DNA of 64,000 nucleotides from Fimbriosthenelais zetlandica. Lineage: Eukaryota. Position 1 is the stretch's first letter, and every line of letters begins with the position of its first letter. Below, piece after piece: positions 8,726 to 36,119 of this stretch. The position numbers were made by a program, and so were the translations under genes. The DNA is taken from assembly GCA_977030845.1 (NCBI GenBank), contig OZ365109.1:18662001-18726000 (forward strand). The letters are read 5' to 3'. Below the pieces are notes generated by a model. That model had not been told where the DNA came from and did not search any database. It saw only the letters and a program-made list of their open reading frames with translations.

Positions 8726-10828
8726 GATAAACCATCAGAGCTATGATTTTGAGTTCCTTATATTAAGGACACCTGAATTCATATATATGGAGAAAAATCT
8801 TCTTTGCAATGTCATTTAGACATTGTAGAGCCAATTCGTTTTGCAGAAATAGGTGCACACAATTTTTTAGTCCATATGTGTCTACATGAAGCCCCCAATG
8901 GACGACGTATTTTATTTAATAGGTTTGAACACAGAAGCAATTGCCTCCTCAATATGAATAATATTGATAATGATATTATAGAGTGTCTGTCACATCTAAA
9001 AGTGTGATAGACAATATACTATGAATAAATAACAAGTAACTGAGGGTTTTTAATTTCCCTGGCTTGGCACAGACGCTAATGGACAACAGACGGCAACCAT
9101 GTATTATTTGTGGGAGAGTGGTCCATTTGTGGGGACGGGAGGCTTGTCCGAAGATGGAGACGGGTTATCCCCACCCACAACCCACTTATGGACCACTCAT
9201 GGCAAGGCTTGTGCACATAGGGACATAGGCCTATGCATAGTCTACACTGTTTGGTCTGGCCTACTTCCCGTTCCCGCCATGATAGAGTAGGCCCTATCCT
9301 ATTGGGAGGGTGGGTGGCTAGGCCTACTGTAGGCCTACCATACGGTAGGGCCTACTTCAGATTTCAGGAGGGTGAGGGAATGAACTCTGGAAGGAGAAAG
9401 AAAAGGAGGACTCGAGGAGGGAGGCGAAGTGGTGAGGTGGGATAGGCTAGGCCTAATGAAGGGGCGAGGCCTACATTTTAGTCTAGACCTAGGCCTACCT
9501 GGTAGGGCATGTAGCCTACCCGGTAGTCCTAGTATAGGCTAGCCTATATTTTTTTAGCAAAGTGTTTTTCTGTTTGACATTTGGTCCCTCCTATCTTTTT
9601 AATGGAAATATTTGTTAATTAGGCCTATATAGAATCACAAACGTTTGGAAATAAAGCGGCCTATTCATATAGCCTATAGGTCTAGCCTACCGGTAGGCTA
9701 CATCAGGAGTAGCCTAGGCCTAGCCCTAGCCCTAGGCTTTATGTAGAATAGGCCGATGCCTATGATAGGCCTAGCCTAATGATTGGCCTAGGCCTACCTG
9801 AGTATTTTATCGTTGGTGGGCCGAGGCCTATTTTTTAACAAAGTAAAAAAAACTATTTTCAAAGTAGGCTTAGGCCTAGGGCCTAAATAAAAACCGACCT
9901 CATGTCATCTGGAGGAGAGAGGTGTAAGCCTTAGGCCTAGGCCTATATGCCCTAATCTTTTTCCACGCCGCCATGGGAAAAAATGTTGACTCATTCCTGA
10001 AATTATTAGAACAAATAACCTAGGCCTATCACTAAAAAGTAGGCCTAGATGCGTCGTAGGCTGCCAGCAACATTCGCGCCAAGGAAAAATACCCGGAAAA
10101 AGCCTAGCAATAGCCTATGAAGATGCTTTAATTATAGAAGCTATTTAATAATAAAATATGTAATAAATGGGACTACTTCATGACGGAATAAAGACACCCC
10201 TAATAAAGTATATGACGGAATTAGGACACCCCATTATAATTTCATGACGGAATTAAGACACCCTGACGGAATAGGGACATCCCAAGTGACGACTTAAGGT
10301 CCCCGGTGTCCTAATTCCGTCATACTGACATAGCTTCAATAATTGTTTAATTACAAAACTAAAAATCAATGTTTATTGCATTTTTTGTCATAGATTTGTA
10401 GGAAACAAGTATATTTATTATATGAATAAAAAAAAACTAAGGTGGGAGTGAATAGGTTACAAGCTATAAATGGATATTTGGAGAGGGTGACGGAATTAGG
10501 GCACCCGACGTTATACAGAATATATACATGTATTTCTCAATTTGGAGGTGCTTTAAAATGCTGACATAACAATGATAGAAAATGTGAATAATGGAAATGA
10601 AAAGCAATATCTCTATCAGTCTGTCATCCAAAGCTCAAGGCAGATTTATAAGATGCTCTATATTTCTATCCATACTATTGAACAGTACATAATTTGAGAA
10701 ATTAAACAATAATTAATCTTTAATAATTATGATCCGCTTATGATCACTATTTCTAAAACTATTAGAGGTAACTTTCATAGAAAATTAGTAAATTTGAGTC
10801 ACAAATGCATGTCCGACATTGTGGGTAA

Positions 10829-17588: not shown

Positions 17589-18613
17589 TGCAGATTACCC
17601 TTCGAAACGTAGCAGGTTGAGCTTTAACTGTATAGCTGAAATCTGAATAGATTTAAATTTTACTTGTAGGCTATACAATACAATAATTAGTCTATACAAT
17701 AAAATATTTGTGTATTGTTCCTGTGTACAGGTTAAATATGGACACCCGGTGTGGACAGGACTGATGCTTTAAGACTTTGTTATAATTATAAACACAGACT
17801 GGGTGCGCGCTTGCCGTTCGCCGCACGCTGGCCGCTCGCCAAATGTCATGTGGCGAAGACATATATCCTTCTAGAACCCTCTAGATTCAGCACAGTGGCG
17901 AATACCATTTTCTTCATGGCAGAGATAGGGATGTTCAATGTACAGCGCGCCTGTCTCAACTCCCCAGTTATAGTTACAGGTTTCTTCATTAACAACCAAG
18001 CAGCTAATAATGCTGTACTACAATGCCAACGGCTTCCATGAGGCTATCAAAGGCAAAAGAAAGGATGTGACGTACTAAATGTGATACAAGTTGTCTGTAC
18101 CAGAGAGACTGGGTATATCGCGTCCGCCTCAGATAACAATGCGGGATCAAGGTTATTTATAAACGGTTGAAAAGGCTACCCAAAACCCGTGGTAATCCGC
18201 TGGAATTAGCCAACATCAAGGGAAGAAATACACCCCAATTATAATGAGAATGAACAAGAGAGAGGTGGAAATACAAATAAAATGTCTATAATTTAGCCCT
18301 CCTCGTATATATAAATACCCCCAGAGGTTCATGCTGCAAATGGAGACACAATTTGGAATTTTAATGACAGCGCATGGAATAAGAAATAAATAAAATATTA
18401 AATTATATCCAGATATTCCCAGATATATGTTAATCCATTGTGAAAATATAATATTTCAATTTTCTCAAATTTTTCTCCGTTTCTCTTACTAAAAATATCT
18501 AGCAGACTGTGTCTAGCGTATTATTTTATGCATGCAGGTTTTATGTACCAGTGCATGTGCTTCCCACCTCCCCCCGGCCACGCCCGGGCTCAGTTTGGGG
18601 TCAGGGCCAGATA

Positions 18614-18960
18614 GATCAATTATACCAAGTAGTGAAGGGAGATATCTCCTAATCGACCAAGTGAGAAAATAAAATATCCATTAACTTCGATCAATTATGA
18701 CAGAGAGTGGAGGGAGATAGCCCTTAATCGACCATGCAATTGAGAAAGTAAAATATCCACTACCTTAGATCAATTATTACAGGTAGTGGAGGGAGATAGC
18801 CTCTAATCGACTAAGTGAGAAAGTAAAATATCCCCTACCTTAGATAAATTATAACAGATATAGTATAGGACGGAGATCCCTAATCGTTGAAATTAGAAAG
18901 TAAAATATCCATTAACCAAGATCAATTATACACTGTAATAGGTAGTGGGAGATATACATT
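18614..18960. repeat. Diverged tandem repeat, 75-79 bp unit, ~4.5 copies
   Basis: GATCAATTAT...GGAGATA...TAATCG...GAGAAAGTAAAATATCC anchors at 18614, 18689, 18768, 18843 and 18920. Confidence 0.85.
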
Positions 18961-27845: not shown

Positions 27846-29504
27846 ACTCCACAGGTCGAGACTAGCAGAGAACAGAATATCTGAACATTATTACACATCC
27901 AGATTAGTAGAACATCATGATCACAGGCGCAGACTAGCAGTCATGATACCACAGGTGCATAATGACTCCACAGGTGTTGACTATCATAACATCATGTCTT
28001 CACAGGTGCAGACTAGCAGCTACCGTACTAGCAGAACATCATGATTGTAGGCTACCAGAATATCATGTTTTCACAGGTGCAGACTAACAGAACATCATCT
28101 CACAGGTGCAGACAACCAGAACATCATGATCTCACAGGCCCAGACTAGCAGAACATCATGATCTCACAGGTGCAGACTAGCAGAACAGCATGATTCTACA
28201 GGTGTAGACTACAAGAACATCATGATTCCACAGGTGCAGACAAGCAGAACATCATGTCTTCACAGGTGCAGACTAGCAGAGCATCATCTCATAGGTGCAG
28301 TCTAGCAGAACATCATGATTCCACAGGTGTAGACTATCAGAACATCATCATCTCACAGGTGTAGACTATCAGAACATCATGTCTTCACAAGTGTAGACAA
28401 GCAGAACATCATCATCTCACGGGTGCAGTCTAGCAGAACATCATGATTCCACAGGTGTAGACTATCAGAACATCATCATCTCACAGGTGTAGACTATCAG
28501 AACATCATGTCTTCACAAGTGTAGACAAGCAGAACATCATCATCTCACGGGTGCAGTCTAGCAGAACATCATGATTCCACAGGTGTAGACTACCAGAACA
28601 TCATGTCTTCACAGGTGCAGACTAGCAGAACATCATCAACACAGGCCCAGACTAGCAGAACAGCATGAATCCAAAGGTGCAGACGAGCAGAACATCATGA
28701 GTCCCAGGTGTAGACTATCAGAACATCATGTCTTCACAAGTGTAGACTAGCAGAACATCATCTCATAGGTGCAGTCTAGCAGAACATCATGATTCTACAG
28801 GTGTAGACTACCAGAACATCATGTCTTCACAGGTGTAGACTAGCAGAACATCATCTGATAGGTGCAGACTAGCAGAACATCATGATTCCACAGGTGAAGA
28901 CTACCAGAACATCATGATTCCACAGGTGTAGACTGGCAAAACATCATGTCTTCACAGGTGTAGACGAGCAGAACATCATCTCATAGGTGCAGACTAACAG
29001 AACATCATGATTCCACAGGTGTAGACTATCAGAACATCATCATCTCACAGGTGTAGACTAGCAGAACATCATCTCACAGGCGCAGACTAGCAGAACATCA
29101 TGATTCTACAGGTGTAGACTACCAGAACATCATGTCTTCACAGGTGTAGACTGGCAGAACATCATCTCATAGGTGCAGACTAGCAGAACATCATGATTCT
29201 ACAGGTGTAGACTACCAGAACATCATGTCTTCGCAGGTGTAGACTGGCAAAACAACATGTCTTCACAGGTGTAGACTATCAGAACATCATGTCTTCGCAG
29301 GTGTAGACTGGCAGAACATCATCTCACAGGCGCAGACTAGCAGAACATCGTAATTCCACAGGTGTAGACTAGCATAACGTCATGTCTTCACAGGTGTAGA
29401 CTATCAGAACACCATGTCTTCACAGGTGTAGACGAGCAGAACATCATCTGATAGATGCAGACTAGCAGAACACCATGATTCCACAGGTGTAGACTATCAG
29501 AACA
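27846..29504 (+). repeat. Satellite left arm: 32/29-bp units CACAGGTG(T/C)AGACTAGCAGAACATCAT(GATTC/GTCTT/CATCT/CT)
   Basis: About 50 tandem units, degenerate at the left edge, with an exact 128-bp higher-order duplication at 28322-28577. Confidence 0.97.
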
Positions 29505-29687
29505 TGTTAAGCTAGCCATGATGGAGGAAAGGAAGACGTACAACACATGTGTCTTATCTAAAGCTTGGGACCCGAGAGAATGAGAGCTCCGCGTTGTCTT
29601 ATCTTTTATTAGCAATAGTTACATACAAGCTCGTGTGGCGGCGCCACTATAAGTCAGACTAGTTATGAATGTTCACACCAGTTTACA
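29505..29687 (-). repeat. 3' LTR of the copia element
   Basis: Direct repeat of 33045-33227. It is preceded on the minus strand by the PPT AGTGGGGG (plus 29688-29695). Confidence 0.97.
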
Positions 29688-29855
29688 CCCCCACTTGAAC
29701 ATTTGATAACATGCTTCAAAAATTCATACAGAAACGTTTTCAGAAACTTCACATAACGTTTATCAGTTTATACAATCATGGAAATTTAACAATATATTAT
29801 ACTGTCCGAAAGTGTATTCATTACAATTTAGAGTTTTGCAGTTATATAGACATAT

Positions 29856-32800
29856 TCAAAAACATTTATCATGATACTCTAACAACTTTTTCAGATAGCG
29901 TTTTTGACTCATTTTGACTTGATCATTTTCGACCTTGGATTCTATTCCTAAGAACCATGATAAGATTCCCAAGTCAGACATGTGGAATCTTTTCTTCAAC
30001 TTTGTTTTCACCTCAGACAACAAACATTCACTATCAGCAGCAAGTATTAAATCATCTAACCGGACCAACAATATAACATTACCTTGTCCATCGGTTCTGG
30101 TGTAGATGCACGCATCAACTTGTGATTGTACAAAATCATTTTGAGTTAGGTACTCTTTTAGAGTCCGATTCCAGTTTCGACCACTTTGTTTCAATCCATA
30201 GAGAGACTTGTTTAGTCTCCACACACAGTTTACATCATTACCAGTAGCTTCATAGCCTTTAGGCGGATCAATATATATTTCTTCTTCATTGGGTGCGTTC
30301 AAATAGGCTGTCTTCACATCAAGCTGATGTACAATAAGATTGTTTTGGGCAGCCACCTGGGCTAATCCCCTTAGTGAGGTCATCTTTGCTTTTGGGCTGA
30401 AGGTTTCTTTATAATCAATGCCCTCTACCTGACTATAACCTTTCGCAACATATCTGGCTTTATATCGCACCTCTTTACTTGCACCTTCTTTATCATTATA
30501 CACCCATCGACCCCCCACTGTCTTCCTACCATCTGGTAAAGGGGTTACAGAGTAGGTGTCATTTTCCCTCAGAGACTCCATTTCTGTCTCCATGGCATCT
30601 CTCCAACAATTTGAGTCAATGGTTTCCACATAGGTTTGAGGTAGACCCAACACTTTATAACAATAATCAACATTACAATTTACCTTCTCACCTCTAACAT
30701 AATCATCTAACCTTTTGGGCGGGCGCCTGTCTCTGGCGGGGTACCTTGCCTCCCTTACCTCTTGGTTACCTTGGGCTCCCTGCGCCTCGTTTCCCTGGTT
30801 TTCTACATTTTCATTTTGTTCATCGCGATCATAATTCTCAATCAACACATCTTCAATTGGCATAGGGGCATTGATAGGACCTTCTTCTATTATGTCAGTG
30901 AATCTGACGTTCCTGTATTTCTTTACATTTCCCGTATCTGGGTGATACACTAAGTATGCAGGGCTTCCCCTGTCGTATCCTACAAACCTTCCCTTTTTGC
31001 TTTTAGCATCCAACTTCTTCTTGTAATCATTATCATATGCATAACACACACTCCCGAATACATGCATCTTTGAAACATCTGGTTTCTTACCAACAAACAT
31101 GGAAAATGGTGTCTGCTCTATACGTTGGTTGTAACATCTGTTTCTGATATAAGCAGATGCCATAACCGCATACGTCCACAGGTTTTTAGGCAACTTTGCC
31201 TCTAACAACATACATCTGGCCATTTCAAAGAGTGTTTTCCATCCCCTTTCGGCCGAACCATTTTGGTGTGGTGAAAATGGTGCTGATGTCTCGTGTTTAA
31301 TCTGATTTTTAATCAGTACATCTCTGAATTCTTTACATGTATACTCGGTACCGTTATCGCTTCTTACACATTTTACCTTGCCATATGGCGCACAATCAGC
31401 TAGGAAACGCTCTAATGCTTTCACAGAATCACTTTTATGTTTCAAAAAGTATACAAAAATAATACCAGAAAAATCATCTGTAAAGGATATTGCGTACCTA
31501 AAGCCCTCTCTGGCTGTTGGATCAATTGGTCCAGCAAGGTCGGTGTGAACCATCTCGAGAATAGATGTAGCCCTTTGTCTCGGAATGCTACTTTGTGGGT
31601 TCGTTTGTTTTCCCATGGCACATGTTTCACAGTTGAACTTTTCTTTACTAATACACATACCTTCTGATACCTTTTCAAGCTGTATGATATCAGGAACATT
31701 GCAATGTCCGAGGATATTATGCCACGTTTTCAAGTCGCAAACTCGGTTTGCACAGTCAATTATGTCACTTTCACACTTCAAATAATATAGGCGTCCCTGC
31801 TGTTTTATAGCGAACTTGGTTCCATCTGGAGTCGTCATGTACGATTGTTCCTGTCTCAGTGTTACTATTGCTCCTTTCTGTGTCGCCACTTGCACAGAGA
31901 ATATGTTGTGTGGATATGTCGGGATGTAGAGTGCATTTTGGAGGGTTATTTTCACATGTCTACCTTTATCGTTTTGTATCACTACCATGGCGTCTCCCCG
32001 CTTCATGGCTACATTATTGGTCCTACTACCGTCAGCCAGTTCGATGTAATGTTCACTGGGTAGAAAGGAATTATCAAAACGTGTGAAAAGAGACTCATCT
32101 GTAACAATGTGGGTTGTGGCCCCACAATCAACTAGTAGTGAATCCTTTTTGTTGTTCGAAACATCCGTTAAATTCAGCTTGAACACAAACGAATGACTGT
32201 CCCTTGTGTCTGTCACACTGCCTCCATCTCCTACTACTTTTGCCCCATCAGTCGTTCTCCCGCCATGTGCGTTCTGCCCGCCATGTGCGTTCTGCCATCT
32301 ACACGACTGGTCTGTGTGGTTAGAGCGTTTACACAAGCTACACCACATGCTCTTCCCGTACTCTTTCTTTTGTCCACAGTCCATGGCCATGTGGCCGTAT
32401 TTCCTACATTTATAACACTGTCTATTATTTCTCTTTGACTCCGCATTCATAACACTGTCCTCAGTGACGGATCTTGCCGTCTCTGTATCTTCATAGCTTC
32501 TTAGCATGACTTTAAATTCTTGGAACGACACTTCTCTCTCCCTTTGTGTTACAACAACTACAAACGACTTGTATCTATCAGGCAGGCCTTTTAGAACCAT
32601 TGCTGTTAACAGGCTATCACTCACCAGTTCACCAGTATTTCTTAGTGCTGTGGCGGCCTTCTCTGCTTTGATGATGTAGTCGGTGATGGATTCATCCGAT
32701 CCTTTAACTAGGGAAGTCAGTTCCGTATATAGCGCGATAATCCTGGGTTTTCCTGTACCCGCATAATGTGCCCTCAATATGGCCATCGCTCTCCTTCCAT

Positions 32801-33059
32801 CGTCAGCTGCATCCCTCATAACCAACGACAGGCTTCTATCATCTAGGAACTGTATTAGCTCGGCAAACGCTTCTTCGTTTTTGGCGGCAAATCCTTCTGG
32901 CTCCACAGCATTGGTTTCCAGTTGAATAGTTTCCTTTAATTTCCTGAGCTTCATGTATCCTAGGAACTTGCTCTCCCATAGCTCGTATTTCTGTTCATCT
33001 CCATCGAAAAATAATCTGCTCCAGCGGTTGCTGGGCCCATAACCTGTTAAGCTAGCCAT
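29856..33059 (-). CDS. Copia Gag-Pol polyprotein, 1067 aa from the ATG inside the 5' LTR; truncated in RT
   Basis: Starts MASLTGYGPS. Contains two CX2CX4HX4C knuckles (CYKCRKYGHMAMDC, CSLCKRSNHTDQSC), protease LVDCGATTH, integrase HHCC plus HTDLAGP/RSDNG/NGSAER, and RT YKARYVAKGYSQ and LYGLKQS. The catalytic motif reads RLDD. The ORF ends KKLLEYHDKCF with no RNase H. Confidence 0.93.
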   Translation of the reverse strand: MASLTGYGPSNRWSRLFFDGDEQKYELWESKFLGYMKLRKLKETIQLETNAVEPEGFAAKNEEAFAELIQFLDDRSLSLVMRDAADDGRRAMAILRAHYAGTGKPRIIALYTELTSLVKGSDESITDYIIKAEKAATALRNTGELVSDSLLTAMVLKGLPDRYKSFVVVVTQREREVSFQEFKVMLRSYEDTETARSVTEDSVMNAESKRNNRQCYKCRKYGHMAMDCGQKKEYGKSMWCSLCKRSNHTDQSCRWQNAHGGQNAHGGRTTDGAKVVGDGGSVTDTRDSHSFVFKLNLTDVSNNKKDSLLVDCGATTHIVTDESLFTRFDNSFLPSEHYIELADGSRTNNVAMKRGDAMVVIQNDKGRHVKITLQNALYIPTYPHNIFSVQVATQKGAIVTLRQEQSYMTTPDGTKFAIKQQGRLYYLKCESDIIDCANRVCDLKTWHNILGHCNVPDIIQLEKVSEGMCISKEKFNCETCAMGKQTNPQSSIPRQRATSILEMVHTDLAGPIDPTAREGFRYAISFTDDFSGIIFVYFLKHKSDSVKALERFLADCAPYGKVKCVRSDNGTEYTCKEFRDVLIKNQIKHETSAPFSPHQNGSAERGWKTLFEMARCMLLEAKLPKNLWTYAVMASAYIRNRCYNQRIEQTPFSMFVGKKPDVSKMHVFGSVCYAYDNDYKKKLDAKSKKGRFVGYDRGSPAYLVYHPDTGNVKKYRNVRFTDIIEEGPINAPMPIEDVLIENYDRDEQNENVENQGNEAQGAQGNQEVREARYPARDRRPPKRLDDYVRGEKVNCNVDYCYKVLGLPQTYVETIDSNCWRDAMETEMESLRENDTYSVTPLPDGRKTVGGRWVYNDKEGASKEVRYKARYVAKGYSQVEGIDYKETFSPKAKMTSLRGLAQVAAQNNLIVHQLDVKTAYLNAPNEEEIYIDPPKGYEATGNDVNCVWRLNKSLYGLKQSGRNWNRTLKEYLTQNDFVQSQVDACIYTRTDGQGNVILLVRLDDLILAADSECLLSEVKTKLKKRFHMSDLGILSWFLGIESKVENDQVKMSQKRYLKKLLEYHDKCF
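33031..33044 (-). other. Primer binding site, initiator tRNA-Met half-molecule type
   Basis: GGTTATGGGCCCAG directly abuts the 5' LTR. From recall, this is the PBS of Drosophila copia and GalEa elements. It is also translated as GYGP. Confidence 0.85.
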
Positions 33060-33227
33060 GATGGAGGAAAGGAAGACGTACAACACATGTGTCTTATCTA
33101 AAGCTTGGGACCCGAGAGAATGAGAGCTCCGCGTGGTCTTATCTTTTATTAGCAATAGTTACATACAAGCTCGTGTGGCGGCGCCACTATAAGTCAGACT
33201 AGTTATGAATGTTCACACCAATTTACA
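33045..33227 (-). repeat. 5' LTR of the copia element (contains the Gag ATG at 33057-33059)
   Basis: Direct repeat of 29505-29687 with 2 substitutions. Confidence 0.97.
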
Positions 33228-33431
33228 GAACATCATGTCTTCACAGGTGCAGACTAGCAGAACATCATCAACACAGGCCCAGACTAGCAGAGCAGCATGA
33301 ATCCAAAGGTGCAGACGAGCAGAACATCATGATCTCACAGGTGTAGACTATCAGAACATCATCATCTCACATGTGTAGACTAGCAGAACATCATGATCTC
33401 ACAGGTGCAGACTAGCAGAACATCATGTCTT
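33228..33431 (+). repeat. Remainder of the satellite left arm, between the copia and the inversion point
   Basis: About 6 units in the same orientation as 27846-29504; resumes in register after the GAACA TSD. Confidence 0.95.
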
Positions 33432-33439
33432 GATAATAT

Positions 33440-35535
33440 ACACCTGTGAAGACATGGTGTTTTGCCAGTCTACACCTGCGAAGACATGATGTTCTGGTAG
33501 TCTACACCTGTAGAATCATGATGTTCTGCTAGACTGCACCTATGAGATGATGTTCTGCTAGTCTACACCTGTGAGTTGATGATGTTCTGCTTGTCTGCAC
33601 CTGTGATATGATGATGTTCTGCTAGTCTGGGCCTGTGATGATGATGTTCTGCTAGTCTACACCTGTGAGATGATGATGTTCTGATAGTCTACACCTGTGG
33701 AATCATGATGTTCTGCTAGTCTGCACCTATGAGATGATGTTCTGCTCGTCTACACCTGTGAGATGATGTTCTGCCAGTCTGCACCTGTGAAGACATGATG
33801 TTCTGGTAGTCTACACCTGTGGAATCATGATGTTCTGCTAGACTGCACCTGTGAGATGATGATGTTCTGCTTGTCTACACTTGTGAAGACATGATGTTCT
33901 GATAGTCTACACCTGTGGAATCATGGTGTTCTGCTAGTCTGCATCTATCAGATGATGTTCTGCTCGTCTACACCTGTGAAGACATGATGTTCTGATAGTC
34001 TACACCTGTGAAGACATGACGTTATGCTAGTCTACACCTGTGGAATCATGATGTTCTGCTAGTCTGCGCCTGTGAGATGATGTTCTGCCAGTCTACACCT
34101 ATCAGATGATGTTATGCTAGTCTACACCTGTGAAGACATGATGTTCTGGTAGTCTACACCTGTCGAATCATGATGTTCTGCTAGTCTGCGCCTGTGAGAT
34201 GATGTTCTGCTAGTCTGCACCTATCAGATGATGTTATGCTAGTCTACACCTGTGAAGACATGATGTTCTGGTAGTCTACACCTGTAGAATCATGATGTTC
34301 TGCTAGACTGCACCTATGAGATGATGTTCTGATAGTCTACACCTGTGAGATGATGATGTTCTGCTTGTCTGCACCTGTGATATGATGATGTTCTGCTAGT
34401 CTGGGCCTGTGATGATGATGTTCTGCTAGTCTGCACATGTGAGATGATGTTCTGCCAGTCTACACCTGCGAAGACATGATGTTCTGGTAGTCTACACCTG
34501 TAGAATCATGATGTTCTGCTAGTCTGCGCCTGTGAGATGATGTTCTGCCAATCTACACCTGCGAAGACATGATGTTCTGGTAGTCTACACCTGTAGAATC
34601 ATGATGTTCTGCTAGTCTGCGCCTGTGAGATGATGTTCTGCCAGTCTACACCTGCGAAGACATGATGTTCTGGTAGTCTACACCTGTAGAATCATGATGT
34701 TCTGCTAGTCTGCGCCTGTGAGATGTTGTTCTGCTAGTCTACACCTGTGAAGACATGATGTTCTGGTAGTCTTCACCTGTAGAATCATGATGTTCTGATA
34801 GTCTGCGCCTGTGAGATGATGTTCTGCCAGTCTACACCTGCGAAGACATGATGTTCTGGTAGTCTACACCTGTAGAATCATGATGTTCTGCTACTCTGCG
34901 CCTGTGAGATTATGTTCTGCTCGTCTACACCTGTGAAGACATGATGTTTTGCCAGTCTAGACCTGTGGAATCATGATGTTCTGGTAGTCTGCACCTGTGG
35001 AATCATGATGTTCTGCTAGTCTGCACCTATCAGATGATGTTCTGCCAGTCTACACCTGCGAAGACATGATGTTCTGGTAGTCTACACCTGTAGATTCATG
35101 ATGTTCTGCTAGTCTGCGCCTGTGAGATGATGTTCTGCTAGTCTACACCTGTGAGATGATGATGTTCTGATAGTCTACACCTGTGGAATCATGATGTTCT
35201 GCTAGTCTGCACCTATCAGATGATGTTCTGCCAGTCTACACCTCCGAAGACATGATGTTCTGGTAGTCTAGGCCTACACCTGTAGAATCATGATGTTCTG
35301 CTAGTCTGCGCCTGTGAGATGTTGTTCTGCTAGTCTACACCTGTGAGATGATGATGTTCTGATAGTCTACACCTGTGGAATCATGATGTTCTGCTAGTCT
35401 GCACCTATGAGATTATGTTCTGCTCGTCTACACCTGTGGAATCATGATGTTCTGCTAGTCTACACCTGTGAAGACATGATGTTCTGGTAGTCTTCACCTG
35501 TAGAATCATGATGTTCTGATAGTCTACACCTGTGA
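33440..35535 (-). repeat. Satellite right arm, same unit in reverse orientation
   Basis: About 65 units reading ATGATGTTCTGCTAGTCTACACCTGTG on plus, with a 93-bp (32+32+29) higher-order period at ~34430-34960. Confidence 0.97.
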
Positions 35536-36119
35536 GAAATGGGCCATGCTGGGCCCTGACATTAGGGTAGGCCTAGGCCTAGATGAAAATGTAGGCTAAT
35601 ATTAGGCCTTATAGCCTAATATAGGCCTAGGACCTACTACCCGTATAGGGCACCGTAGGACTACATAAGACTGGGGGCAGGCAATGGAGGCCTGGAGCTT
35701 TTCTTTTTCGAAATAAATACTTGTGAAAATATGGGTTAATTTGACAGAAGGAATTGCTGAAATAAATATTATATATTTTGTAGGCCCTATGTCATGTGTC
35801 CGCAATAAAGATGATTGAATTGAATTGAATTGAATAAATCTTTTATCCTCATAATAAGGTCATGCTCTTAGGTTTATATTGCCATTCGAACCCCTGTTTT
35901 CCACCGTTTATGAATTAATAATTTATTTTAAAAGATCATCCGCCCCCTCCCACCTTGCCATCTATGAGGTGGTCCCACCATTTTGAATCAGTCTACAGTT
36001 TGCTTTCCATACGAGGTTAGTTTTCCATGATGCCGTTCACGAAATCCGAATGATGTTCTGCTTGTCTGCAAATAGCCTCGCCCCACAGGGGCTGCCTCTT
36101 GCAAGGCGACAGGGAAGTT

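What the first reader, a model, noticed from the sequence alone, without database searches (positions are those of the whole stretch)
35269..35276. TAGGCCTA caught in the act: a TA to TA-GGCC-TA insertion inside a satellite unit
Seen: sibling satellite units read GGTAGTCTACACCTGTAG, but this one reads GGTAGTCTA-GGCCTA-CACCTGTAG. That is a clean 6-bp gain at the TA, and the ancestral state is fixed by the many sibling units. Established: TA-targeting cut-and-paste transposons leave the duplicated TA plus a few terminal bases when they excise (Tc1 leaves TA-CA-TG-TA; Sleeping Beauty leaves TA-CAG-TA or TA-CTG-TA). Inference: this is the excision scar of an element with GG(C)...(G)CC ends and a TA target. 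No such element is present intact in this window, and the combination is not the classical Tc1/mariner terminus. The site is an internally controlled record of how this genome's most conspicuous motif is generated.
Basis: partly seen in the sequence, partly recalled or inferred. Interest (0 to 1): 0.72.

Follow-up and report, generated by a model that had tools for sequence, protein, structure and literature searches.

The report
Six-letter transposon scar in a satellite
One unit of a tandem repeat has gained six letters at a TA, making the palindrome TAGGCCTA; it is one of about 113,000 such marks in this worm genome, most likely left when a cut-and-paste jumping gene cut itself out, but that jumping gene is still not found.

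Summary
At 35269-35276 one 32-nt satellite unit reads GTCTA-GGCCTA-CACC where its siblings read GTCTACACC. It is the only 38-nt unit among 66 in its arm. Genome-wide, 380 units keep the ancestral TAGTCTACACCTGT, and this is the only 1-8 nt insertion at that TA inside an array of this satellite.

The excision-scar reading is the best one but is not proven. TAGGCCTA occurs 113,146 times against 2,970 for its reversed control. The same TA-to-TAGGCCTA gain recurs between 97-99% identical transposon copies. The 5-nt forms TAGGCTA/TAGCCTA, and a parallel class TACCGGTA with TACCGTA/TACGGTA, are the most enriched words of their kind, as Sleeping Beauty-type end-joining predicts for GGC...GCC and CCG...CGG ends. 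Two rarer classes, TAGATCTA and TACATGTA, have resident parents with TA duplications that I confirmed from empty sites.

The GG-ended parent was not found in about 300 kb. I tested and rejected two tempting candidates: abundant ISL2EU elements (AT duplication) and a GGCC-ended Tourist-like MITE (TTA duplication). Reads could not be checked.

The scan has found this same phenomenon several times before on other DNA of this genome. This site is a clean but ordinary instance.

The parts
35269..35276 (.). Palindromic octamer TAGGCCTA: an ancestral TA plus a 6-nt gain (GGCC plus a second TA). Read as an excision scar.
   Evidence: sibling units read GTCTACACC; this is the only 38-nt unit in the arm and the only insertion at this TA in the satellite genome-wide.
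35257..35294 (+). The single 38-nt satellite unit (32 + 6) that carries the scar.
   Evidence: unit lengths in the + arm are 29 (20 units), 30 (2), 32 (43) and 38 (1).
33439..35537 (+). The + arm of the 32-nt satellite (93-nt higher-order period). It supplies the sibling units that fix the ancestral state.
   Evidence: TRF: period 32, 67.3 copies; period 93, 22.5 copies.
27846..33430 (-). The inverted arm of the same satellite, interrupted at about 29.76-33.23 kb by non-satellite DNA. Its units also lack the insertion.
   Evidence: the closest inverted paralogue, 29258-28971, is 94.8% identical and has no GGCCTA.
35566..35640 (.). Cluster of the same and decayed scars just past the array end: TAGGCCTAGGCCTA at 35568-35581, TAGGCCTA at 35622-35629, plus TAGGCTA, TAGCCTA and TAGGACCTA.
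   Evidence: the nearest other TAGGCCTA is 299 nt downstream of the finding.

Best explanation
The 6 nt are the scar of one insertion-and-excision cycle of a TA-targeting cut-and-paste DNA transposon (Tc1/mariner-like in mechanism) whose ends read 5'-GG(C)...(G)CC-3'. Insertion duplicated the TA of GTC-TA-CACC. On excision the transposase cut the non-transferred strand 2-3 nt inside each end, which left 3' overhangs (GG or GGC) on both flanks. End-joining then sealed them. With GGC overhangs, a 2-nt GC overlap gives TA-GGCC-TA with no mismatch, while a full 3-nt overlap with a central G-G mismatch gives TA-GGC-TA or TA-GCC-TA. SHOWN: the TA target and the clean 6-nt gain; the recurrence of the same gain in unrelated young repeats; the 5-nt companions; the parallel scar classes that have resident TA-duplicating parents. 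INFERRED: the existence and end sequence of the GG-ended parent, the 2-3 nt cut offset, and the repair route. The parent is expected to be low-copy or lost. The GA-class family has only about 30 copies, yet its scar word TAGATCTA is about 4-fold enriched.
For: (1) Site.
(2) Genome scale: 113,146 TAGGCCTA against 2,970 for the reversed control. It is the most over-represented 8-mer in my 264-kb sample (180 observed, 11.8 expected under an order-3 Markov model).
(3) Independent TA-to-TAGGCCTA gains between 97-99.9% identical transposon copies: L023:7763/L025:8081 against L024, and L035:3455/L037:3492 against L036. TA-to-TAGATCTA at L038:7369, and TA-to-TACGGTA/TACCGTA at L037:3666 and L036:6683.
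(4) Of 32 strand-collapsed TA-NNN-TA heptamers, the two most enriched are TACCGTA/TACGGTA (3.9x) and TAGCCTA/TAGGCTA (3.4x). They match the two most enriched TA-NNNN-TA palindromes, TAGGCCTA (15.6x) and TACCGGTA (7.6x). The 5-nt form (162) outnumbers each single-substitution variant counted (10-46), so it is mostly a primary product, not decay.
(5) Resident TA-duplicating parents for other classes, with empty sites: TA|GAGTAGTGGCGGG (about 1 kb, about 30 copies) and TA|CAGTGAAGTCC (807 nt), plus a Tc1-like TA|CAGTTG element.
(6) Other TA-NNNN-TA palindromes are denser within 250 nt of TAGGCCTA than elsewhere (CC class 3.3x, GA class 9.3x, other TA palindromes 6.2x, CA class only 1.7x), while AT-flanked reversed palindromes are not (0.93x). 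These ratios rest on small counts (2-15 near, 3-30 far).
(7) Flanking bases of the octamer are diverse, so it is not part of a repeat consensus.
(8) Published mechanism: Tc1/mariner transposases cut the non-transferred strand a few nt inside the element, and end-joining leaves the first or last 2-4 nt between the TAs. The Sleeping Beauty canonical scars are TACAGTA/TACTGTA (PMC6943129).
Against: No TA|GG...CC|TA element with terminal inverted repeats was found in the window or in about 300 kb of other loci. The Tc1-like and pogo-like transposase hits in the genome are few (21 and 47), and the Tc1-like ends I could read start with CAGT. A GG start is not a terminus I know for Tc1/mariner (from memory). 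No filled or empty allele at this locus and no reads were available. In most events I checked, a motif of the same class lies within 36-364 nt. That fits local hopping but equally fits copying from a nearby template. Longer end remnants that would reveal more of the parent's terminus were not seen.
Confidence: 0.68

Rival explanations
1. Templated insertion without a transposon. A break or stalled fork at the TA primed on a nearby (TAGGCC)n tract through CTA or TA microhomology, as in polymerase-theta-type end-joining or template switching. It copied one GGCCTA unit and returned, so the motif seeds itself locally.
For: TAGGCCTAGGCCTA lies 299 nt downstream. In most events I checked, a same-class motif lies within 36-364 nt. 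Motifs cluster and form short tandem runs. No parent element was found.
Against: It does not explain why the unit is always bounded by TA on both sides (T...A flanks of AGGCCT 191, against 1-20 for other flank pairs). It does not explain why at least four different central tetranucleotides share the TA-NNNN-TA frame and cluster together, or why two classes match the ends of resident TA-duplicating elements. Copied tracts would vary in length and often carry donor flank, and the gains I saw carried none.
Confidence: 0.13
2. Scars of a process other than ordinary germline transposition. One version is a domesticated TA-cutting transposase. Another is the programmed removal of a GG-ended element family that is absent from the assembled DNA, which would explain why the parent cannot be found.
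For: There are 113,146 uniform scars with no parent in about 300 kb. An earlier agent reported crowding near gene starts, which I did not test.
Against: The scars are inherited through transposon copies and decay by substitution like ordinary germline sequence. A low-copy parent is enough to account for them: about 30 GA-class copies coexist with a 4-fold TAGATCTA excess. Nothing here points to soma-germline differences.
Confidence: 0.05
3. Assembly or sequencing artefact: the 6 nt are not in the real DNA.
For: The site lies in a satellite array, where assemblies are weakest, and no reads could be laid.
Against: The inserted letters are exactly the genome's recurrent motif rather than a slipped repeat unit or homopolymer error. 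The same gain is seen at independent loci shared by two copies each. The unit is otherwise intact.
Confidence: 0.03
4. Scar of one of the abundant PHIS-superfamily elements: ISL2EU with AGGGCC ends, or a Tourist-like MITE with GGCC ends.
For: The genome has at least 478 DDE_Tnp_4 candidate hits (150 scored), many of them intact and multi-copy. Family C ends read ...ATAGGGCCTGCAAGTC. A 405-nt MITE has GGCCACA...TGTGGCC ends.
Against: Empty sites show that ISL2EU duplicates AT at A|AT|T, not TA. Family G shows this inside a 75-nt satellite and family C inside a 121-nt repeat, in agreement with PMC4482050. Such a scar would be an 8-nt gain at AT reading ATAGGCCTAT. The finding is a 6-nt gain at C-TA-C, and only 16% of octamers have A...T flanks against 11.6% background. 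The MITE duplicates TTA, which would give TTAGGCCTTA.
Confidence: 0.03

Closest known systems
Tc1/mariner (ITm) excision footprints, e.g. Sleeping Beauty TACAGTA/TACTGTA and Tc1/Tc3 TA-CA-TG-TA
   Same: TA target duplicated on both sides; 2-3 terminal element bases retained; a 6-nt form and a 5-nt form with either central base, which is the pattern expected from 3' overhangs joined by end-joining (PMC6943129).
   Different: The retained bases are GG(C)/(G)CC, not CA(G)/(C)TG. No parent element or transposase was identified. The scale (about 113,000 intact scars, the most over-represented 8-mer in my sample) is far beyond anything I know to be reported (from memory; searches found no description).
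ISL2EU elements of the PHIS superfamily (PMC4482050)
   Same: Very abundant and young in this genome. Family B carries THAP, HTH and DDE_Tnp_4 domains plus a YqaJ ORF. Family C ends contain ...TAGGGCC.
   Different: The target duplication is AT within AATT, so their scars cannot produce a 6-nt gain at C-TA-C.
PIF/Harbinger Tourist-like MITEs such as mPing (GGCC ends; from memory)
   Same: A resident 405-nt MITE has GGCC...GGCC ends, the same four bases as the centre of the scar.
   Different: It duplicates TTA, not TA. PIF/Harbinger excision is usually precise (from memory).
Templated insertions of polymerase-theta-mediated end-joining
   Same: Short insertions identical to nearby sequence; local clustering.
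   Different: Here the unit has a fixed length and a fixed TA frame, and it exists in several end-specific classes.

Membership tests
Tc1/mariner-type excision footprint | Gain at a TA, with TA present on both sides of the retained bases | tested here: met
   GTC-TA-CACC became GTC-TA-GGCC-TA-CACC.
Tc1/mariner-type excision footprint | Retained bases equal the first or last 2-4 nt of a resident TA-duplicating TIR element | tested here: not met
   No TA|GG...CC|TA element was found in the window or in about 300 kb of loci. The feature is met only for the GA and CA classes. The whole genome could not be scanned for TIR pairs.
Tc1/mariner-type excision footprint | Spectrum of end-joining variants (canonical 5-nt form with either central base, 6-nt form, occasional 7-nt form) | tested here: met
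   TAGGCTA/TAGCCTA is enriched 3.4x and TACCGTA/TACGGTA 3.9x, the top two of 32 heptamers. Gains of 5, 6 and 7 nt are seen between paralogues.
Tc1/mariner-type excision footprint | Filled, empty and footprint alleles at one locus | not testable with these tools
   No sequencing run was listed, and the derived 20-mer is unique in the assembly.
Tc1/mariner-type excision footprint | An ITm DD(E/D) transposase in the genome that binds GG-ended repeats | tested here: inconclusive
   DDE_3 gave 21 hits and DDE_1 47 hits, and mariner PF01359 none. The only ends I could read start with CAGT. The pogo-like loci could not be fetched.
ISL2EU (PHIS) excision scar | Target A|AT|T with AT duplicated | tested here: not met
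   AT duplication is shown for families G and C. The finding's ancestral site is C-TA-C with a 6-nt gain.
PIF/Harbinger (Tourist-like) excision scar | Target TWA duplicated (3 nt) | tested here: not met
   The GGCC-ended MITE duplicates TTA. The ancestral site has no TTA or TAA, and a T before or an A after the octamer is not favoured.
Replication slippage / tandem duplication | Inserted bases repeat the adjacent sequence | tested here: not met
   GGCCTA shares only CTA with the flank GTCTA. It was classed as 'other', not 'tandem', like the TAGGCCTA gains.

The most novel reading that the evidence does not exclude
A so far undescribed TA-targeting cut-and-paste lineage with GGC...GCC ends (and a sister with CCG...CGG ends) has cycled through this annelid-like genome so often that its scars, about 113,000 intact and a similar number of 5-nt or decayed forms, have become the commonest 8-letter word and pile up in hot spots. 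The parent now survives only at very low copy number, or is absent from the assembled DNA. If so, transposon excision would be a major genome-wide source of new short palindromic sequence, possibly including regulatory sites.
Probability: 0.2. Interest if true: 0.75.

Novelty: new variant of a known kind. Interest (0 to 1): 0.45.

Why it matters
Excision scars are normally treated as rare curiosities. Here a single scar word makes up about 0.2% of the genome's letters. It marks TA sites at a rate of roughly 0.3% per TA (a rough estimate from about 80 TA per kb in my sample), and it can be read as a fossil record of a transposon that is otherwise invisible. The satellite site gives a clean, internally controlled example of the elementary event. 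The class structure (GGCC, CCGG, GATC, CATG) gives a way to infer the ends and cut offset of lost transposons from their scars alone. If the reported crowding near gene starts holds, the process may also write palindromic sites into promoters.

Tried and rejected
1. ISL2EU as parent. The young multi-copy DDE_Tnp_4 families looked TA-flanked (family C...A-TA-GGGCCTGCAAGTC). Empty sites then showed an AT duplication at A|AT|T, as published. Rejected.
2. Tourist-like GGCC-ended MITE (L036:3560-3966). Its duplication is TTA. Rejected.
3. A GG-start variant of the GA-class MITE. All of about 60 ends genome-wide start with GAG, and one with CAG. None found.
4. Longer end remnants that would extend the inferred terminus. 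Near-palindromes TAGG...CCTA of 9-69 nt and TAGGCC-VN-GGCCTA genome-wide gave only decayed tandem scars.
5. TIR scans for TA|GG...CC|TA, exact and gapped, at 40 nt to 10 kb. They returned only ISL2EU family C and satellite foldback pairs.
6. Reads. No run was listed.
7. More genome sequence. I did not use N-run patterns to read out further letters.
8. Literature. No paper describes TAGGCCTA as a genomic motif or a genome-wide excess of excision scars.
9. Gene conversion from a variant unit. The derived 20-mer is unique in the genome.

Full report
OBSERVATION

The stretch 35262-35285 reads GGTAGTCTA-GGCCTA-CACCTGTAG. It lies in the + arm of a 32-nt satellite (33439-35537; TRF period 32, 67 copies, with a 93-nt higher-order period). 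An inverted arm of the same satellite runs from about 27846.

- The ancestral 18-mer occurs 10 times in the window and the derived 24-mer once. The core GTCTACACC occurs 60 times in the array.
- When the + arm is cut at GTTNTG anchors, the 66 units are 29, 30 or 32 nt long, apart from one of 38 nt, which is the unit in question.
- The two closest paralogous stretches lack the 6 nt. One is 182 nt upstream (95.2% identity) and the other lies in the inverted arm (94.8%).
- Genome-wide (G000, 447 Mb; the window is C1:18662001-18726000), TAGTCTA-N(0-8)-CACCTGT has 412 matches, and 380 of these are the exact ancestral form.
- The 32 matches with a 1-8 nt spacer are scattered singletons, fewer than the reversed control (104). 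Only C1:18697264 (window 35264) sits in an array of this satellite.

The derived form is unique, which rules out conversion from another variant unit. No sequencing run was listed, so read support and allelic state could not be examined.

IS IT A MEMBER OF A GENOME-WIDE CLASS?

Yes.

- TAGGCCTA occurs 47 times in the window against about 1 expected.
- It occurs 113,146 times in the genome against 2,970 for the reversed palindrome ATCCGGAT.
- In 264 kb (the window plus 200 kb fetched around transposons) it is the most over-represented 8-mer.
- Its flanks are diverse, so it is not part of a repeat consensus.
- AGGCCT is flanked T...A 191 times, against 1-20 for other flank pairs, so the unit really includes both TAs.

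Comparison of transposon copies that are 97-99.9% identical gave independent gains of the same kind:

- TA to TAGGCCTA at L023:7763/L025:8081 (absent in L024).
- TA to TAGGCCTA at L035:3455/L037:3492 (absent in L036).
- A GGCCT gain at L037:3308.
- TA to TAGATCTA at L038:7369.
- TA to TACGGTA or TACCGTA at L037:3666 and L036:6683.
- A 7-nt TA-GATTC-TA at L038:2927.

The other 5-6 nt gains are unrelated to these motifs; some are plain tandem duplications.

WHAT THE SPECTRUM SAYS ABOUT MECHANISM

Among the 16 TA-NNNN-TA palindromes the enrichments over an order-3 Markov expectation are:

| Palindrome | Enrichment |
|---|---|
| TAGGCCTA | 15.6x |
| TACCGGTA | 7.6x |
| TACTAGTA | 5.9x |
| TACATGTA | 5.6x |
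| TAGATCTA | 3.8x |

The median for non-palindromic TA-NNNN-TA words is 1.17x, and the top ones are one-step derivatives of TAGGCCTA.

Among the 32 strand-collapsed TA-NNN-TA heptamers the two most enriched are TACCGTA/TACGGTA (3.9x) and TAGCCTA/TAGGCTA (3.4x; 162 copies). These are exactly the 5-nt companions of the two strongest octamers. The 5-nt form outnumbers each single-substitution variant I counted (10-46 copies), so it is mainly a primary product and not decay.

This is the pattern published for Tc1/mariner excision. The non-transferred strand is cut a few nt inside the element. The resulting 3' overhangs are joined by end-joining, and the scar carries the first or last 2-4 element bases between the two TAs. 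Sleeping Beauty gives TACAGTA or TACTGTA (PMC6943129).

For ends GGC...GCC, a full 3-nt overlap has a central G-G mismatch and gives TAG(G/C)CTA. A 2-nt GC overlap pairs perfectly and gives TAGGCCTA. The same logic gives TAC(C/G)GTA and TACCGGTA for CCG...CGG ends. That derivation is my inference. A 2-nt cut with GG ends, or a 4-nt cut with GGCC ends, would also give the octamer.

PARENTS OF THE MINOR CLASSES

Nested insertions with empty sites in sister copies show true TA duplications for two elements:

- An element of about 1 kb, TA|GAGTAGTGGCGGG...CCCGCCACTACTC|TA (L024:400-1400).
- An 807-nt element, TA|CAGTGAAGTCC...GGACTTCACTG|TA (L023:8816-9624).

A 1.7-kb Tc1-like element has TA|CAGTTG ends (L001).

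The GAG family has about 30 copies of about 1 kb and three longer ones. About 20 nt from the L024 copy the sequence reads TAGGCCTAGATCTA, which is stacked GG-class and GA-class scars. A family of about 30 copies therefore coexists with a roughly 4-fold genome excess of its predicted scar. This shows that a scar-rich class does not need an abundant parent.

HOT SPOTS

Within 250 nt of a TAGGCCTA, the other classes are denser than elsewhere:

| Class | Density near TAGGCCTA relative to elsewhere |
|---|---|
| CC class | 3.3x |
| GA class | 9.3x |
| CA class | 1.7x |
| Other TA-NNNN-TA palindromes | 6.2x |
| AT-flanked reversed palindromes | 0.93x |
| TA dinucleotides | 1.2x |

These ratios rest on small counts (2-15 near, 3-30 far). 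The finding itself lies 299 nt from a cluster at 35566-35640. Clusters of mixed classes fit shared insertion hot spots better than self-copying of a single motif.

THE GG-ENDED PARENT

It was not found. Exact and gapped TIR scans for TA|GG...CC|TA (40 nt to 10 kb) over the window and about 300 kb of loci gave only one family and satellite foldback pairs.

That family (C: about 12 copies of 7.4 kb...ATAGGGCCTGCAAGTC) belongs to the very abundant DDE_Tnp_4 elements, with at least 478 candidate hits. Family B carries THAP, HTH_Tnp_4, DDE_Tnp_4 and a YqaJ ORF, the ISL2EU architecture (PMC4482050).

Empty sites settle their target:

- A family G copy sits in a 75-nt satellite whose intact units read GGGTCAATTATAAC, while the filled unit reads GGGTCAAT|AGACC...GGTCT|ATTATA. 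This is an AT duplication at A|AT|T.
- A family C copy in a 121-nt repeat gives the same result.

Such elements would leave an 8-nt gain at AT reading ATAGGCCTAT. The finding is a 6-nt gain at C-TA-C, and only 16% of octamers have A...T flanks against 11.6% background.

A Tourist-like 405-nt MITE with GGCC...GGCC ends duplicates TTA, so it is rejected too. A GG-start variant of the GAG family does not exist. Searches for longer end remnants gave only decayed tandem scars.

Tc1-like (21) and pogo-like (47) transposase hits exist and mariner PF01359 has none. I did not try to read further letters through N-run patterns.

RIVALS

- Templated copying from the nearby (TAGGCC)n tract remains possible (about 0.13). 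In most events I checked, a same-class motif lies within 36-364 nt. It does not explain the fixed TA frame, the several end-specific classes, or their match to resident elements.
- A non-standard process, such as a domesticated nuclease or elimination of a family absent from the assembly, cannot be excluded (about 0.05).
- An assembly artefact is unlikely (about 0.03).
- A PHIS-element scar was tested and not met (about 0.03).

COMPARISON, NOVELTY AND SCORE

In mechanism this works like a Tc1/mariner excision footprint. Membership is incomplete because the defining parent element is missing. The GG(C) terminus and the scale are unusual, and I found no description in the searchable literature.

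The scan has already reported the same phenomenon several times on other DNA of this genome, including other tandem-repeat 'natural experiments'. As a finding, this site is therefore a clean but ordinary instance. Taking about 80 TA per kb gives roughly 36 million TA sites and about 0.3% of them scarred, so one to two scars are expected in an array of this size.

- the genome-wide control for this satellite;
- the 5-nt companion classes and the overhang model;
- parents of the GA and CA classes proved by empty sites;
- the tested rejection of ISL2EU and of the GGCC-ended MITE as parents.

Best explanation 0.68; interest 0.45; new variant of a known kind.

Noticed in passing
L041:1595-8363 (G000:C23), L029:321-7680, L026:2785-8621 and other loci: DDE_Tnp_4 (PHIS superfamily) elements are very abundant and young: at least 478 candidate hits, with several families of 5.8-7.5 kb at 99% identity or more. 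Family B has THAP, HTH and DDE domains plus a YqaJ ORF. Empty sites in two satellites show AT duplication at A|AT|T.
   Followed up: partly
L036:3560-3966: A 405-nt Tourist-like MITE with GGCCACATTTTTTTAATTG ends and a TTA duplication. A similar stretch also lies inside the ISL2EU family C copies (shared 16-mers in L029, L030 and L031).
   Followed up: partly
L024:400-1400; genome places: A TA-duplicating non-autonomous family with GAGTAGTGGCGGG ends: about 30 copies of about 1 kb and three longer copies (7.8, 5.4 and 2.5 kb) that may carry its unknown transposase. None of them coincides with a DDE_1, DDE_3 or DDE_Tnp_4 hit.
   Followed up: partly
window 28010-28037 (- strand): One unit of the inverted satellite arm is 15 nt too long and reads GCTAG-TACGGTAG-CTGCTAG. 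It contains the CC-class 5-nt scar TACGGTA together with a small duplication, and may be a second, messier scar in the same array.
   Followed up: no
window about 29760-33230: The inverted satellite arm is interrupted by about 3.5 kb of non-satellite DNA that encodes a CX2CX4HX4C zinc-knuckle-like stretch on the - strand. This is probably a retroelement inserted in, or lying between, the arrays.
   Followed up: no
window 18612-18930: A 75-nt tandem repeat related (82-89% identity) to the satellite that hosts an ISL2EU copy on G000:C23 (L041:578-1597).
   Followed up: no
window 9226-10047: The densest scar field in the window: 15 intact TAGGCCTA in about 820 nt, plus many TAGCCTA, TAGGCTA, TAGGGCCTA and TAGACCTA variants. 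It looks like a long-used hot spot.
   Followed up: no
L037:3260-3720 / L035 / L036: Inside transposon family E, a 450-nt stretch carries several TAGGCCTA (two of them gains absent from L036), a TAGATCTA, two TACGGTA (one stacked as TAGGCCTACGGTA) and decayed forms. L036 alone carries a further TACGGTA. This shows that the process also acts on transposons themselves.
   Followed up: partly
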